From: Octopus sinensis
Lineage: Eukaryota
Reading direction: 5' to 3'
NCBI RefSeq assembly: GCF_006345805.1
Contig: NW_021830091.1
Span: 1-5,259 of the forward strand
Length of the DNA stretch: 5,259 nucleotides
In this document: positions 33-3,889 of the stretch, piece after piece
How the letters are laid out: every line of letters begins with the position of its first letter
Numbering within the stretch: the stretch's first letter is position 1
The notes under the pieces: generated by a model
The model's input: only the letters and a program-made list of their open reading frames with translations
What the model was told of the DNA's origin: nothing
Databases searched by the model: none
Made by a program: the position numbers and the translations under genes

Positions 33-160
33 GCTCATAAGGTAAATTCTCACGAAACCAAAGTTGAAGTTAATGCAAGAATTTGTTGATTTTGAATTTG
101 ATAGTTAAATAGGTGTTGGGTATGAGTTCTCTGTTTATAATGATGCTAATTCTACCCAGT

Positions 161-437
161 GGAGGCACATGGCCCAGTGGTTAGAGCAGCGGACTCGCGG
201 TCGAGGGATCGTGGGTTCGAATCGCAGAGACCGGGCGATGTGTGTGTTTATGAGCGAAACACCGAAGTTCCACGCGGCTTCGGATGAAGGTAATGGCGAA
301 ATTTCTGCTGACTCTTTCGCCACAACTTTCTCTCACTCTTTCCTCCGGCATCTTGCAGCTCACCTGGGAACCTATAGGCCAAAGAAACCGGGAAGCCGGC
401 CCTATGAGCCAGGCATGGCTCGAGAAGGAACAAACAA
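161..437 (+). mobile_element. tRNA-derived SINE (family A here), apparently full length
   Basis: tRNA-like head starting GGAGGCACATGGCC, with A box TGGCCCAGTGG (170-180) and B box GGTTCGAATCG (214-224). The body is GC/CpG-rich against AT-rich flanks. It ends in a stem-loop GAGCCA-GGCA-TGGCTC (406-421) and a short AACAAACAA tail. Possible decayed target-site duplication: TCTACCCAGT (151-160) vs TCTAACCAAC (439-448), 7/10. It resembles octopus SINEs as I recall them; octopus tRNA-SINE families OK, OR1 and OR2 are described, but I cannot assign this copy to one. Confidence 0.8.
170..224 (+). promoter_or_regulatory. RNA polymerase III type-2 internal promoter (A box + B box) of SINE A
   Basis: TGGCCCAGTGG fits TRGCNNARYGG exactly; GGTTCGAATCG fits GGTTCRANTCC with one mismatch; spacing is tRNA-like. 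Confidence 0.75.
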
Positions 438-1258: not shown

Positions 1259-1414
1259 AGGATAAGATCGTTAATTTAAAATAAAATAACGATTTTATCA
1301 AGTGGCCAGCATGGAAAAAATACCTTCAAGGTAATAATTATTAAATTATAATTAGGGTATGAATCTGCTATTTTCAGCAAGGTGGTATCTCGTAGATACC
1401 TTAACTTATAATTT

Positions 1415-1417
<3 letters not shown>
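1259..1417. other. Palindrome/hairpin-rich island between two (TA)n tracts; possible fragment of a microsatellite-inserting element
   Basis: Inverted repeat 1261-1273/1287-1299 (12/13, one G-T); TACCTT-C-AAGGTA 1321-1333; palindromes 1332-1343 and 1344-1353; GGTATCT-CGT-AGATACC 1384-1400. Confidence 0.35.
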
Positions 1418-1458
<41 letters not shown>

Positions 1459-1461
1459 ATA
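1418..1461. repeat. (TA)n microsatellite
   Basis: (TA)14 at 1419-1446, one interruption, then further TA units. Confidence 0.95.
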
Positions 1462-1966
1462 CCTATTGACATCATACATTTTCATATATTTCATTGTCTT
1501 TATTATTTAAATTGAAATTAAACAATCTTTAGATATTCTCCGGCTTCTAAATCTTGTTATCTTTCGAAACACCTCTGTTAATTTAATCAGCTCAATAATG
1601 ATGTTGCCCTTTAAAACACAAACACTCTATCATTTTTACGCATTCGAGATCCATTCATATTCATGAATTTCAGTAGCGCGCTTCAATTAATTTATTCCAT
1701 CGTGACAAAGCTTTACGCTCATCTGCAAATGTGTAATTTACTATTCCAACATATATATGAACGACGAGATTTTAGCGGCCATAAACGACGGTTCGGTTTA
1801 CGTAGTTGACGAAGCGTAAGGATACAGAAATACATGCGCCCACGGTCCGGTGACATTATTCGTGGACTTATGGTGTGTTTGCACCTATATTGTCTACAAG
1901 GAGAGCTTCTTATTCTGAGACAAACTGGGCAGCGTGTTGTTTTCTTTGTTCGAATGTACACAAACA

Positions 1967-2054
1967 GGTTGTCAAGCGATGGGTGGGGGTGGGTGGAGCT
2001 GGGTGGGGTGGGTGTGACACAAGAACAAAGACATAAAACATGCACATATACATA
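1967..2054 (-). mobile_element. SINE family B, outer copy: start of the 3' half (hinge remnant, GT-rich segment, C-tract, ATCGCTTGACAACC)
   Basis: The minus strand reads TATGTATATGTGCATGTTTTATGTCTTTGTTCTTGTGTC-(C-rich)-ATCGCTTGACAACC, collinear with 2462-2533 of the intact copy (13/14 match to ATTGCTTGACAACC at 2520-2533). It may extend to about 1775 through three collinear 8-mers: AGAATAAG (1916-1909), ATAAGTCC (1871-1864), ATGGCCGC (1782-1775). Confidence 0.6.
1981..2012 (+). other. Canonical G-quadruplex-forming motif
   Basis: Six runs of 3 or more G (1981-83, 1985-89, 1991-93, 2001-03, 2005-08, 2010-12) with four 1-nt T loops and one 7-nt loop; fits (G3+N1-7)4. Confidence 0.7.
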
Positions 2055-2196
2055 GGTGCAGGTGTAGCTGTTTGAAAAAAAAGCTTGTTTATCAACGACA
2101 TGGTTCTGGGTTCAGTCCCACTGCGTGGCACCTTGAGCAAGAATCGAACAGGCAAATGTCTTGTCAGTGGATATAATCGACAGAAGCTAAAAGCCC

Positions 2197-2199
<3 letters not shown>
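2055..2199 (+). mobile_element. SINE family B, middle copy: 5' half (tRNA head and body), degenerate
   Basis: 2099-2141 matches 2342-2384 of the intact copy at 40/43, including the B box. The A box is decayed (TAGCTGTTTGA). It ends AAGCCCGCC where the intact copy has AAGCCTGTC before its TA hinge. Confidence 0.85.
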
Positions 2200-2242
<43 letters not shown>

Positions 2243-2298
2243 CATATATCCATATATACATATATACATATATAATATACACACAATATATATATATA
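2200..2298. repeat. (TA)n microsatellite with CA interruptions; expanded hinge of the middle SINE copy
   Basis: (TA)19 at 2201-2238 followed by mixed TA/CA units. Confidence 0.95.
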
Positions 2299-2729
2299 GG
2301 CGCAGGAGTGGCTGTGTGGTAAGTAGCTTGCTAACCAACCACATGGTTCCGGGTTCAGTCCCACTGCGTGGCATCTTGGGCAAGTGTCTTCTGCTATAGC
2401 CCCGGGCCGACCAATGCCTTGTGAGTGGATTGGTAGACGGAAACTGAAAAGAAGCCTGTCGTATTATGTATAATATATATATATGTTGTTTGTTTTGTGT
2501 CTGTGTTTGTTCCCCTAGCATTGCTTGACAACCGATGCTGGTGTGTTTACGTCCCCGTCACTTAGCGGTTCGGCAAAAAGAGACCGATAGAATAAGTACT
2601 GGGCTTACAAAGAATAAGTCCCGGGGTCGAGTTGCTCGATTAAAGGCGGTGCTCCAGCATGGCCGCAGTCAAATGACTGAAACAAGTAAAAGAGATAAAG
2701 AGATAAAAGAGAAAGAGATAAAAGAGATA
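2299..2729 (+). mobile_element. SINE family B, inner copy: full length, least diverged
   Basis: Starts GGCGCAGGAG; A box TGGCTGTGTGG (2309-2319); B box GGTTCAGTCCC (2352-2362); CTTGGGCAAGT motif after the tRNA part, similar to that position in MIR/CORE-type SINEs; internal TA hinge 2462-2484; 3' module 2485-2686; tandem TAAAAGAGA-like tail 2687-2729. Confidence 0.9.
2309..2362 (+). promoter_or_regulatory. RNA polymerase III internal promoter (A box + B box) of the inner SINE B copy
   Basis: TGGCTGTGTGG and GGTTCAGTCCC at tRNA-like spacing, each slightly off consensus. Confidence 0.65.
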
Positions 2730-2940
2730 TATACACATATGTGTTTGTATGTCTTTGTCTCTTTTTTTGCTCCCTCTAATGTTTCATAACCGGTTCTGGT
2801 GTGTTTACGTCCCCGTAACTTAGCGGTTCGGCGAAAGGCTTTACAAAAATGTAATCATTGGATTTGATGAATTCGACTAAGATTTTTCCCAGGAGGTGCT
2901 CCAGCATGGCCTGAACAAATAAAGTAAAGGATAAAACAAA
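2730..2940 (+). mobile_element. SINE family B, middle copy: 3' half, degenerate
   Basis: Begins in a TA/CA remnant, then a GT-rich segment. 2796-2832 matches 2538-2574 at 36/37; 2895-2911 matches 2648-2664 at 17/17. It has two internal deletions relative to the inner copy and ends in an A-rich tail (TAAAGTAAAGGATAAAACAAA). Confidence 0.85.
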
Positions 2941-3094
2941 GCATCGGGATTCCACACAGTTTCTATCTCCCAAAAAATGACCCATAAGGCATTAGTAGAG
3001 GACACCTGTCCATAGTGCCGTACTGTGTGACCGAACTGGAAACCACATGGTTTGCAAACCGAGTTTCTTAACTGCACTGTAATGTCCATGTGCC
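2941..3094 (-). mobile_element. SINE family B, outer copy: 5' half, strongly degenerate
   Basis: The minus strand GGCACATGGACATTACAGTGCAGTTAAG...TGGTTTCCAGTTCGGTCACACAGTACGGCACTATGGACAGGTGTCCTCTACT-AATGCCTTATGGG...GAAACTGTGTGGAATCCCGATGC aligns collinearly with 2299-2462 (roughly two-thirds identity by eye, one deletion of about 17 nt) and stops at the hinge position. Confidence 0.8.
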
Positions 3095-3356
3095 CCATAG
3101 AACCCCCTGTAGAGATATGGCTGCTCTATCATTACTGATCAGGACGCAACACAAACACAAAGTGTCCTTGTTACTCCAAATTTTTAGTGAGACTGTTGAG
3201 AACCGGTGGCGTTAATGCCTTTCCTACGGGCATTAATAGGAAAGTCTGCAAAGAAACCTGACTTAAACTAGAAATTTAAGACTAGATTGTTCACTACTTT
3301 GGTTAACGAGAAAATCTATTTTTCCTGCCGTTTAGCATTTCAACGCCATTCACGAT

Positions 3357-3394
3357 ATCTATCTATCTACCTATCTATCTATCTATCTATCTAT

Positions 3395-3490
<96 letters not shown>

Positions 3491-3684
3491 TTATCTATCT
3501 AACTATCTATCTGCATCTATCTATCTAGCTAGCTATCTATTTATCTATCTACCTATCTATCTATCTATCTATTTATCTACCTACCTACCTACCTATCTAT
3601 CTATCTTCTATCTATCTATCTATCTATCTATCTACTATTATCTATCTATCTATCTACCTATCTATTTATCTATTTATCTATCTA

Positions 3685-3687
<3 letters not shown>
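3357..3687. repeat. (ATCT)n / GATA tetranucleotide array, about 80 units
   Basis: Pure (ATCT)20 at 3409-3488; variant units ACCT, ATTT, ATAT, AACT and AGCT elsewhere. Confidence 0.97.

Positions 3688-3725
<38 letters not shown>
3687..3725. repeat. (TA)19 microsatellite
   Basis: Directly abuts the ATCT array. Confidence 0.95.
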
Positions 3726-3727
<2 letters not shown>

Positions 3728-3771
3728 GTGTGTGTTGTGGTGTGTGGTGTGTGTGTGTGTGTGTGGTGTGT
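3726..3771. repeat. (GT)n microsatellite, interrupted
   Basis: (GT)9 at 3747-3764 within GT/GGT units. Confidence 0.9.
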
Positions 3772-3889
3772 ATGTACATATATATTGATTGAATGATCGA
3801 TACATCTTTTATGCACACTATCGTTTCTAGATTCACCCAAGAAAGCACCAATCAGGTTCGAGCATGAATCTAAATAAAATCTAAGTAAC

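What the first reader, a model, noticed from the sequence alone, without database searches (positions are those of the whole stretch)
1967..3094. Triple Russian-doll SINE: three copies of one family, each inserted into the internal hinge of the previous copy
Seen: the intact element (2299-2729) is 5' half + TA hinge (2462-2484) + 3' half. It is flanked by a lone degenerate 5' half (2055-2199) that stops at a TA tract and a lone degenerate 3' half (2730-2940) that starts at a TA/CA remnant. These are flanked in turn by a minus-strand 5' half (3094-2941) ending at the hinge position and a minus-strand 3' half resuming with hinge sequence (2054-1967). Divergence rises outward. A candidate target-site duplication for the middle insertion is ATAAAACATGCA (2033-2044) vs ATAAAACAAAGCA (2931-2943). 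Inference: the element carries its own preferred target, so each new copy creates a landing pad for the next. This would be a self-targeting safe-harbour cycle that could help build the SINE-plus-microsatellite clusters of this genome. Nested SINEs are known in general (for example Alu into Alu tails); I do not know of a description of repeated insertion at one internal hinge for this family.
Basis: partly seen in the sequence, partly recalled or inferred. Interest (0 to 1): 0.8.

Follow-up and report, generated by a model that had tools for sequence, protein, structure and literature searches.

The report
Nested octopus-type SINEs at TA hinge
Three short retroposons really do sit one inside another here, each having landed in the TA-repeat "hinge" of the older one. 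This is the expected by-product of a SINE that integrates into TA repeats in a genome holding millions of them, not a special self-homing device.

Summary
The nesting is real. The inner copy (2299-2729) is full length and 98% identical to a consensus I built from 30 copies. The halves at 2055-2199 and 2730-2940 rejoin into one colinear older copy (84%) broken inside its (TA)n(TG)n hinge. The minus-strand pieces 3096-2941 and 2054-1967 rejoin colinearly against an intact copy of a related, older subfamily, again broken at the hinge.

Corrections:
- The outer copy is a different subfamily.
- The outer copy keeps only its hinge plus about 25 nt of its 3' half before an unrelated repeat (1690-1966).
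- The proposed TSD is wrongly placed and no better than chance (P=0.19).
- Middle and outer copies are about equally diverged from their own consensi.

Genome-wide, inverted insertions hit the hinge at least 4-10 times more often per base than the rest of the element. However, the family targets TA-rich sites in general: 15% of young copies directly follow (TA)>=5. The genome holds about 4 million such runs, roughly a fifth of them SINE hinges. Observed hinge nesting (1 of 29 unselected copies; dozens of exact junctions) matches that background.

Most "5' half + full copy" junctions are tandem half-element arrays, not dolls. The closest precedent is the Alu self-insertion hotspot at its A-rich linker.

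The parts
2299..2729 (+). Inner, youngest SINE copy. It is full length: tRNA-like head, (TA)n(TG)n hinge, 3' half and an (AAAGAGAT/GTAAAAGA)n tail.
   Evidence: Aligns to consensus 1-414 at 96.6% by BLAST and 98.3% over aligned columns. nhmmer E=4e-146. Tail repeats at 2687-2729.
2462..2510 (+). Hinge of the inner copy: a TA-rich part (2462-2484) followed by a TG-rich part. It is not yet interrupted.
   Evidence: Corresponds to consensus 164-212 in the 30-copy alignment, where length and sequence vary as in a microsatellite.
2055..2199 (+). 5' half of the middle (host) copy.
   Evidence: Matches consensus 1-~163. It is closest to young-type copies.
2200..2298 (+). Expanded (TA)n: the 5' part of the middle copy's hinge and the target of the inner insertion.
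   Evidence: TRF finds 50 copies of AT at 2200-2298. The tract directly abuts the inner copy's first base.
2730..2940 (+). Rest of the middle copy: TA/CA/TG hinge remnant, 3' half carrying internal deletions, and a degenerate tail.
   Evidence: Matches consensus 172-403. The rejoined middle copy is 83.9% identical to the young consensus.
2941..3096 (-). 5' half of the outer copy, from an older subfamily, ending exactly at the start of the hinge.
   Evidence: 70-84% identical to old-type copies found with the rejoined query. 83.5% to the old-type consensus. nhmmer E=1.2e-7.
1967..2054 (-). Outer copy's hinge (TATGTATATGTG...), a C-rich stretch and the first ~25 nt of its 3' half (CATCGCTTGACAACC). 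The copy ends here.
   Evidence: Colinear with intact old-type copy L050 across the junction. The same motif, CCACCATCGCTTGACAACC, follows the hinge in other hosts.
1690..1966 (-). Unrelated repeat family (TGTACATTCGGACATGGAAAGACAATACGCTGCAC...) that abuts and truncates the outer SINE. It is not part of the doll.
   Evidence: Ten genomic copies align from about 1966 leftwards without any adjacent SINE 5' half.

Best explanation
The region records two successive retroposition events into the internal (TA)n(TG)n microsatellite of an earlier copy.

Order of events:
1. An old-subfamily SINE on the minus strand was present first.
2. A copy of the related younger family then integrated, in the opposite orientation, at the first bases of its hinge.
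3. After that copy had aged to about 16% divergence and its TA tract had expanded to about 100 nt, a recent copy (2% diverged) integrated in the same orientation into that tract.

Inferred mechanism: the family is mobilised by a LINE whose target-primed reverse transcription starts at TA-rich DNA. The SINE tail ends in ...GAGTA. Its TSDs are 4-6 nt ending in TA, and cannot be resolved inside (TA)n. Any (TA)n is therefore a favoured landing site, and the element's own hinge is one of them.

On this view the nesting is a statistical consequence of three things: TA targeting, about 10% SINE content, and millions of TA runs. It is not sequence-specific recognition of self.

Shown: the nesting, the hinge position, the TA bias, the genome-wide junction counts and the background counts. 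Inferred: the enzymology and the partner LINE.
For: Structure of the window:
- Colinear rejoining of both hosts.
- Age asymmetry: the inner copy is 98.3% identical to consensus, the middle 83.9%.
- Both middle halves are closest to the same family (Spearman 0.55).

TA targeting:
- 15 of 100 listed young copies directly follow (TA)>=5, and 79 of 100 follow TA.
- About 12 of 30 aligned copies sit inside long (TA)n on both sides.
- Short TA-ending TSDs are seen in L008, L012, L015, L022 and L028.
- (TA)>=5 runs cover about 2.6% of sampled sequence, so the enrichment is roughly 6-fold.

Hinge hotspot:
- Inverted junctions number 46 and 36. In nearly all of them the insert is bounded by TA.
- Controls give about 5-10 clear events in the 5' body and 38 in the 3' body.

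Independent dolls:
- L027: host halves 80.3% and 79.8%, insert 98.5%.
- L062: host halves 83.2% and 87.5%, insert 95.2%.
- C7:37.873 Mb appears in both inverted junction lists.

Background:
- 2,044,658 (TA)>=5 runs in one phase.
- 17,905 young hinges per strand.
- 36 of 174 runs in representative flanks are hinges.
- 1 of 29 unselected young copies is nested in a hinge.

Literature:
- Alu self-insertions concentrate at the A-rich linker (PMC2836564).
- RTE-type LINE/SINE pairs show a TA insertion signature and microsatellite-like tails (PMC13295347).
- The R4 clade and related clades target microsatellites (PMC4640811).
- Dong-R4 is the most recently active LINE group in Octopus vulgaris (PMC13282606).
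Against: - The partner LINE was not identified and no enzymology was tested.
- The 'TA' just before GGCGCAGG could partly be a transcribed leader rather than target sequence, because 93 of 100 copies have A at -1. The TA-preference argument therefore rests mainly on the longer TA runs and on the resolvable TSDs.
- The comparison with background uses exact-match anchors, a 126-kb flank sample and one sample of 29 copies. A 2-3-fold excess or deficit at hinges cannot be excluded.
- The two inverted junction lists share only 1 locus, where about 9 were expected. Many junctions therefore involve lone halves rather than complete hosts.
- The outer copy lacks most of its 3' half.
- The window is a whole 5.3-kb unplaced contig, and no empty-site allele was found.
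Confidence: 0.8

Rival explanations
1. True self-homing: the element or its LINE recognises hinge-specific sequence beyond (TA)n. Copies would then preferentially land in other copies, forming a self-reinforcing safe-harbour cycle.
For: Insertions are several-fold denser at the hinge than in the rest of the element. Two successive hinge hits occur in one 1.1-kb region. Further dolls exist at L027 and L062.
Against: - Insertion junctions lie in the TA run itself, and copies outside SINEs show the same TA context.
- Observed counts match the expectation from the hinge's share of (TA)n runs. Under plain TA targeting about 45-65 events were expected in exact-anchor hosts, and 3-6% of copies overall. 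Observed were 36-46 inverted junctions plus a few direct dolls, and 1 of 29 copies.
- A second hot spot lies at AATAAGTA in the 3' half, which points to TA or tail microhomology rather than hinge recognition.
Confidence: 0.08
2. The flanking 'halves' arose from local duplication or unequal exchange between TA tracts, as in half-element arrays, or are independent lone halves that happen to lie next to a full copy. On this view they are not hosts split by insertion.
For: - Such structures are common. There are 203 '5' half + start' junctions.
- 24 of 25 inspected loci of this kind are [5' half]n + one full copy with no host 3' half.
- Neighbouring units often share private differences.
- There are 195 'tail + hinge + 3' half' junctions.
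- Head arrays with 66-130-nt periods also exist.
Against: - In the window both flanking halves are about 16% diverged while the enclosed copy is 2% diverged, so they cannot be recent duplicates of it.
- Both halves are present in the right order and orientation, belong to the same family, and rejoin colinearly at the hinge.
- For the outer pair the orientation is inverted, which tandem duplication cannot produce. The rejoined sequence also matches an intact old-type copy across the junction.
Confidence: 0.07
3. Assembly artefact: the 5,259-bp unplaced contig is a chimera of SINE-containing reads joined through TA microsatellites.
For: The window is an entire short contig, C6562. All joints lie in or next to low-complexity TA/TG sequence, where long-read assemblers err. 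No second allele of the locus was found.
Against: - A random chimera would not restore colinear host halves of matching age and subfamily on both sides, at two nested levels.
- The same architecture occurs on chromosome-scale and other contigs (L027, L062, C7:37.873 Mb).
Confidence: 0.05

Closest known systems
Alu self-insertion hotspot at the A-rich linker between the two Alu arms (Levy, Schwartz & Ast 2010, PMC2836564, which credits Abrusan et al. for the earlier report)
   Same: A SINE carries an internal simple-sequence linker that matches the integration preference of its LINE machinery. Copies therefore nest preferentially at that one internal position. In human there are about 15,759-19,000 Alu-in-Alu events.
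   Different: - The linker here is (TA)n(TG)n rather than poly(A).
- The partner LINE is unknown and is not assumed to be L1.
- Both orientations occur here, whereas Alu self-insertion is sense-biased.
- The hinge itself mutates as a microsatellite and expands, here to 99 nt.
Transposition-in-transposition (TinT) nested retroposon analysis (PMC3014933)
   Same: Nested SINE copies give a relative chronology: outer is at least as old as middle, which is older than inner. Nesting is a routine by-product of high copy number.
   Different: TinT treats nesting as random with respect to position. Here the position is strongly biased to one microsatellite.
Microsatellite- or TA-targeting non-LTR retrotransposons and their SINEs. 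Examples: R4/Dong and other restriction-like-endonuclease clades, and Togen for (TG)n (PMC4640811, which cites Kojima & Fujiwara 2004); the RTE-clade 'Tn-TA' signature with microsatellite-like tails (PMC13295347).
   Same: The elements have short tandem-repeat tails, a TA at the target and short TSDs, and they accumulate in simple repeats.
   Different: - No partner LINE was identified here.
- Specificity is a preference, not strict: about 15% of copies directly follow (TA)>=5 and most copies lie elsewhere in AT-rich DNA.
- In those systems the target is not carried inside the element.
SINE-associated microsatellites, for example carnivore tRNA-derived SINEs (PMC1634856)
   Same: SINE copies seed microsatellites. 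In the sample here about 21% of (TA)>=5 runs lie in SINE hinges.
   Different: In the carnivore case the association is described as microsatellites linked to tRNA-derived SINEs (title and abstract of PMC1634856). Here the repeat is internal and doubles as an integration target.
Octopus tRNA-derived SINEs (Ohshima & Okada 1994, cited in PMC4824008)
   Same: The element is a tRNA-like-headed SINE in an octopus-type genome (2.72 Gb, 30 chromosome-scale contigs).
   Different: I could not obtain those published sequences, so identity with any of them is untested. No paper in the searchable library contains this element's sequence.

Membership tests
SINE (non-autonomous, LINE-mobilised retroposon) | Short (<600 nt), non-coding, high copy number and dispersed | tested here: met
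   The consensus is about 414 nt. There are at least 32,805 exact 5'-end matches across all large contigs. The window has no meaningful ORF.
SINE (non-autonomous, LINE-mobilised retroposon) | Pol III head derived from a small RNA (tRNA-like, with A and B boxes) | tested here: inconclusive
   The head has box-like motifs (TGGCTGTGTGG; GGTTCAGTCCC). It folds with an acceptor-like stem and a T-arm-like hairpin, but the z-score is -0.3. ARAGORN and the Rfam tRNA model do not call it.
SINE (non-autonomous, LINE-mobilised retroposon) | 3' tail of simple repeats, with target-site duplications | tested here: met
   Every aligned copy has a (GTAAAAGA)n-type tail. TSDs of 4-6 nt can be resolved in L008, L012, L015, L022 and L028. 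Inside (TA)n they cannot be resolved.
SINE (non-autonomous, LINE-mobilised retroposon) | 3' region shared with a partner LINE | not tested
Two short 3'-terminal fragments in the loci had no reverse-transcriptase-like ORF upstream.
Nested (transposition-in-transposition) insertion | Excising the insert restores a colinear host element without a large gap or overlap | tested here: met
   The middle copy aligns to consensus 1-403 across the joint. The outer copy is colinear with intact copy L050 across the joint.
Nested (transposition-in-transposition) insertion | The insert is younger than the host | tested here: met
   Inner against middle is 1.7% against 16% divergence. Middle (16.1%) against outer (16.5%) cannot be resolved by divergence, so the order there follows from the nesting alone.
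Nested (transposition-in-transposition) insertion | TSD flanking the insert | tested here: inconclusive
The inner copy is flanked by TA repeats on both sides, so no TSD can be resolved. A degenerate ACATA/ACAAA pair at 2050-2054 and 2936-2940 is possible but weak.
Target-specific (microsatellite-homing) retroposon | The great majority of copies lie in one target sequence | tested here: not met
   Only about 15% of young copies directly follow (TA)>=5. That is a preference of roughly 6-fold, not strict specificity.
Self-insertion hotspot of the Alu-linker type | SINE-in-SINE insertions concentrate at one internal simple-sequence position relative to the rest of the element | tested here: met
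   Inverted junctions number 46 and 36 at the hinge. About 5-10 fall in the 5' body and 38 in the 3' body, which are windows 2-2.5 times larger. Anchor frequencies are comparable.
Self-insertion hotspot of the Alu-linker type | An excess over what the general target preference predicts | tested here: not met
   Expected and observed numbers agree within the rough precision available.

The most novel reading that the evidence does not exclude
The internal (TA)n hinge of this SINE superfamily may be a major engine of the genome's repeat landscape.

- It would seed about a fifth of roughly 4 million TA microsatellites.
- Those tracts attract further TA-targeted SINE copies, producing dolls.
- Exchange between the target-site TA tract and the hinge TA tract then duplicates or deletes half-elements. 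That would give the hundreds of [5' half]n + full-copy arrays and 'full copy + 3' half' junctions seen here.

Together these would form a feedback loop that builds SINE-microsatellite clusters and gives rise to new satellites.
Probability: 0.3. Interest if true: 0.55.

Novelty: new member of a known kind. Interest (0 to 1): 0.3.

Why it matters
For annotation, the region is ordinary repeat DNA with no gene. Nested copies like these give a clean relative chronology of SINE subfamilies in this genome.

More broadly, the locus illustrates how a SINE with an internal microsatellite interacts with a TA-targeting integration machinery in a genome that is about 10% SINE and unusually rich in TA repeats. 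This is relevant to how SINE-plus-microsatellite clusters and SINE-derived tandem arrays form in cephalopod genomes.

The locus does not reveal a new mechanism. The same logic is established for Alu and its A-rich linker.

Tried and rejected
- Rfam (E<=1) and ARAGORN on the window gave only low-complexity miRNA-like hits in TA tracts and no tRNA.
- I searched for the missing remainder of the outer 3' half to the left of the unrelated repeat (1261-1760, minus strand). Scores equalled the shuffles.
- I looked for an empty-site allele by searching the genome with the rejoined outer sequence. Only the window matched closely, and other hits were 69-84% family members.
- I tried to count direct-orientation dolls from '5' half + start' junctions. 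This was rejected as a measure because 24 of 25 loci are half-element arrays.
- My first estimate that hinges make up 1.75% of TA runs was corrected to about 0.9%. The BTATATATATA pattern counts only one phase, 88 of 174 runs in my sample.
- My first flank sample was enriched for SINE arrays, so I recomputed on the L002-L060 flanks. Their densities match the genome averages.
- The abundance of 'lone 3' halves' seen with the young-family HMM is partly an artefact, because old-type heads escape that HMM. I therefore did not use it as evidence.
- The partner-LINE search in the fetched loci found nothing.
- The literature search for the element's sequence returned no papers.
- ORF scan found nothing coding.
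Full report
**Source and family.** The window is the whole of contig C6562 in a 2.72-Gb assembly of 13,516 contigs, with 30 chromosome-scale contigs. That fits an octopus genome, which is an inference from size, karyotype and element type.

Searching the assembly with 2299-2729 returned 40 near-full-length copies at 93-97% identity. Aligning 30 of them gives a 414-nt consensus with four parts:
- a head with a tRNA-like layout (1-~163);
- a length-variable (TA)n(TG)n microsatellite, the 'hinge' (~164-212);
- a 3' half;
- a (GTAAAAGA)n tail.

The window contains no credible ORF.

**The observation.**
- The inner copy, 2299-2729, is complete and 98.3% identical to the consensus over aligned columns.
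- 2055-2199 aligns to consensus 1-~163 and runs into a 99-nt TA tract at 2200-2298.
- 2727-2940 aligns to consensus 172-403.
- With the inner copy removed, the two flanks align colinearly to consensus 1-403, with the joint inside the hinge. Scores were 62.5 and 73 against shuffle means of about 10.5 (sd 1.5).
- A profile HMM of the family finds exactly these pieces, plus a minus-strand head at 3070-2956 (E=1.2e-7).

**The outer copy.** The outer head is only about 59% identical to the young consensus by BLAST, and 73.7% over aligned columns.

I searched the genome with the rejoined outer sequence, rc(2941-3120) + rc(1741-2054). This recovered an older subfamily that has the same architecture, that is head, TA/TG hinge, then 3' half. 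Several of those copies span the joint position.
- The rejoined outer sequence is 83.5% identical to a consensus of 12 such copies.
- It aligns without gap or overlap across the joint to an intact copy, L050.

The outer copy was therefore also split at the very start of its hinge (...CCCGATGC | TATGTATATGTG...), by the middle copy in inverted orientation.

1. The outer copy belongs to a different, older subfamily.
2. Its '3' half' is only the hinge, a C-rich stretch and about 25 nt (CATCGCTTGACAACC, to consensus ~237). From 1966 leftwards a different repeat family begins. Ten genomic copies of that family carry no adjacent SINE head. No remainder of the SINE lies beyond it.
3. The candidate TSD ends 10 nt before the middle copy's first base, overlaps its degenerate tail, and is no better than shuffled sequence (P=0.19).
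4. The middle and outer copies are equally diverged from their own consensi (about 16% each). Only the inner-to-middle step shows rising divergence.

**How the family integrates.**
- Of 100 listed young 5' ends, 79 are preceded by TA and 15 by (TA)>=5.
- About 12 of the 30 aligned copies lie inside long TA tracts on both sides.
- Where TSDs can be read they are 4-6 nt and end in TA or CA: L008 AAATA, L012 TAAC, L015 and L022 TGTA, L028 ATAGCA.
- The tail ends in ...GAGTA.
- (TA)>=5 runs cover about 2.6% of sampled sequence, so the enrichment is roughly six-fold.

Caveat: A at -1 in 93 of 100 copies could partly be a transcribed leader rather than target sequence.

Short tandem-repeat tails with a TA at the target are known for RTE-type LINE/SINE pairs (PMC13295347). 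Microsatellite targeting is known for R4 and related clades (PMC4640811). Dong-R4 is the most recently active LINE group annotated in Octopus vulgaris (PMC13282606). I did not identify the partner LINE here.

**Is the hinge a hotspot?** I counted exact-pattern junctions genome-wide.

Inverted orientation cannot arise by tandem duplication, so it is the cleaner test:

| Junction (inverted orientation) | Matches |
|---|---|
| Host 5'-half end + up to 90 nt + reverse tail | 46 |
| Reverse head + up to 80 nt + host 3'-half start | 36 |
| Control: 5' body, about 100 nt window | 41 |
| Control: 3' body, about 125 nt window | 38 |

- In nearly all hinge junctions the insert is bounded by TA.
- Of the 41 matches in the 5' body control, most by their length reach the hinge or have internally deleted hosts. 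About 5-10 are clear body insertions.
- The 3' body control shows a secondary cluster at AATAAGTA.
- The host anchors have similar frequencies, 16-23 per 198 kb.
- Per base, the hinge is therefore hit at least 4 times more often than the 3' half and at least 10 times more often than the 5' half.

Independent complete dolls exist, and C7:37.873 Mb appears in both inverted lists:

| Locus | Host 5' half | Insert | Host 3' half | Note |
|---|---|---|---|---|
| L027 | 80.3% | 98.5% | 79.8% | A second, AT-rich insert lies in the same hinge |
| L062 | 83.2% | 95.2% | 87.5% | |

**Is it more than the (TA)n background?**
- The genome holds 2,044,658 (TA)>=5 runs preceded by a non-A base. In my sample that phase accounts for half of all runs (88 of 174), so there are about 4 million in all.
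- Young hinges with an exact anchor number 17,905 per strand, which is about 0.9% of runs.
- In 126 kb of flanks whose SINE and TA densities equal the genome averages, 36 of 174 runs (21%) lie in or at SINE hinges. The family makes up 9.9% of that sequence.
- Under uniform (TA)n targeting, 3-6% of young copies should sit in some hinge, and about 45-65 in exact-anchor hosts.
- Observed: 1 of 29 unselected young copies (L027), and 36-46 inverted junctions plus a few direct dolls.
- There is no excess, within a precision of perhaps 2-3-fold.
- At a few per cent per step, on the order of a hundred triple nests would be expected in this genome.

**A complication worth recording.** Direct-orientation junctions are abundant: 203 for '5'-half end + head' and 195 for 'tail + hinge + 3' half'.
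- Of 25 distinct loci inspected for the first class, 24 are one to seven lone 5' halves followed by a single full copy, with no host 3' half.
- Neighbouring units often share private differences, which indicates local duplication.
- Head arrays with 66-130-nt periods also occur.
- The two inverted lists share only one locus, where about nine were expected.

They do not explain this window. Both flanking halves of the middle copy are old and the enclosed copy is young. The outer/middle pair is inverted.

A plausible origin is unequal exchange between the TA tract at the target site and the TA hinge. This is inference and was not tested.

**Comparison with what is known.** The closest precedent is the Alu self-insertion hotspot at the A-rich linker between the Alu arms, which is explained by the L1 endonuclease and priming preference (PMC2836564). 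Nested retroposons are routinely used for chronology (TinT; PMC3014933). SINE-seeded microsatellites are also known (PMC1634856).

I found no description of this behaviour for the octopus family, and no paper in the library contains its sequence.

**Verdict.** This is a correctly observed triple nest and a new example of a known kind of event. It is of modest interest. The self-targeting reading holds only in the weak sense that the element carries a copy of its general target.

Noticed in passing
G000 loci L013 (131-1901), L066 (1129-2279), L085 (1349-2139), L090 (1349-2310); also C20:5.7085-5.7097 Mb and many sites on C27: Tandem arrays of 2-7 units, each unit a SINE 5' half plus (TA)n with a period of about 190 nt. 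Every array ends in exactly one full-length copy. Units often share private substitutions.
   Followed up: partly
G000 C6:112.404-112.617 Mb, C14:10.519 Mb, C18:42.199 Mb, C22:13.622 Mb, C1445:8.1-8.6 kb, C11097:6.3-6.8 kb: Satellite-like arrays of truncated SINE heads with shorter periods (about 66, 87, 98, 117, 125 and 129 nt), joined ...TA|GGCGCAGG.
   Followed up: no
G000, 195 loci listed: A full SINE plus tail is followed directly by (TA)n(TG)n and a lone 3' half. This class is as frequent as the '5' half + full copy' class. Its origin is unresolved: dolls, duplications or decay products.
   Followed up: no
SINE consensus ~296-303 (AATAAGTA), for example C1:197300666, C11:22059707, C26:18700975: A secondary hot spot for inverted SINE insertions in the 3' half, at a motif resembling the tail end (...GAGTA). 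This suggests tail-to-target microhomology.
   Followed up: no
window 1690-1966 (minus strand): A separate repeat family (TGTACATTCGGACATGGAAAGACAATACGCTGCACAAG...) with at least 10 genomic copies at 68-74% identity. Some copies are followed by a second unit (L035, L037, L052). It truncates the outer SINE.
   Followed up: partly
window ~158-430 (plus strand): Another element with a tRNA-like head (GGCCCAGTGGTTAGAGCAGCGGACTCGCGGTCGAGGGATCGTGGGTTCGAATC...), not detected by the family HMM or by ARAGORN. It is probably a different SINE family.
   Followed up: no
window 3356-3775: A (TATC)n array of about 93 units runs into (TA)n and then (TG)n, giving 420 nt of compound microsatellite. Further (TA)n tracts at 1175-1258 and 1418-1461 bracket a 160-nt segment.
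   Followed up: no
G000 genome-wide: About 2.04 million (TA)>=5 runs in one phase, so about 4 million in all, or about 1.4 per kb. This is an unusually TA-microsatellite-rich genome. In a 126-kb sample about 21% of the runs lie in SINE hinges.
   Followed up: partly
L027 (G000:C3991), locus ~1054-1480: The hinge of an old SINE holds a young SINE and also about 410 nt of unrelated AT-rich sequence. The hinge therefore collects insertions other than this SINE family.
   Followed up: no
L080 463-902: Two SINE 5' halves in opposite orientation meet at their hinge ends, forming a palindromic head-hinge-head structure.
   Followed up: no
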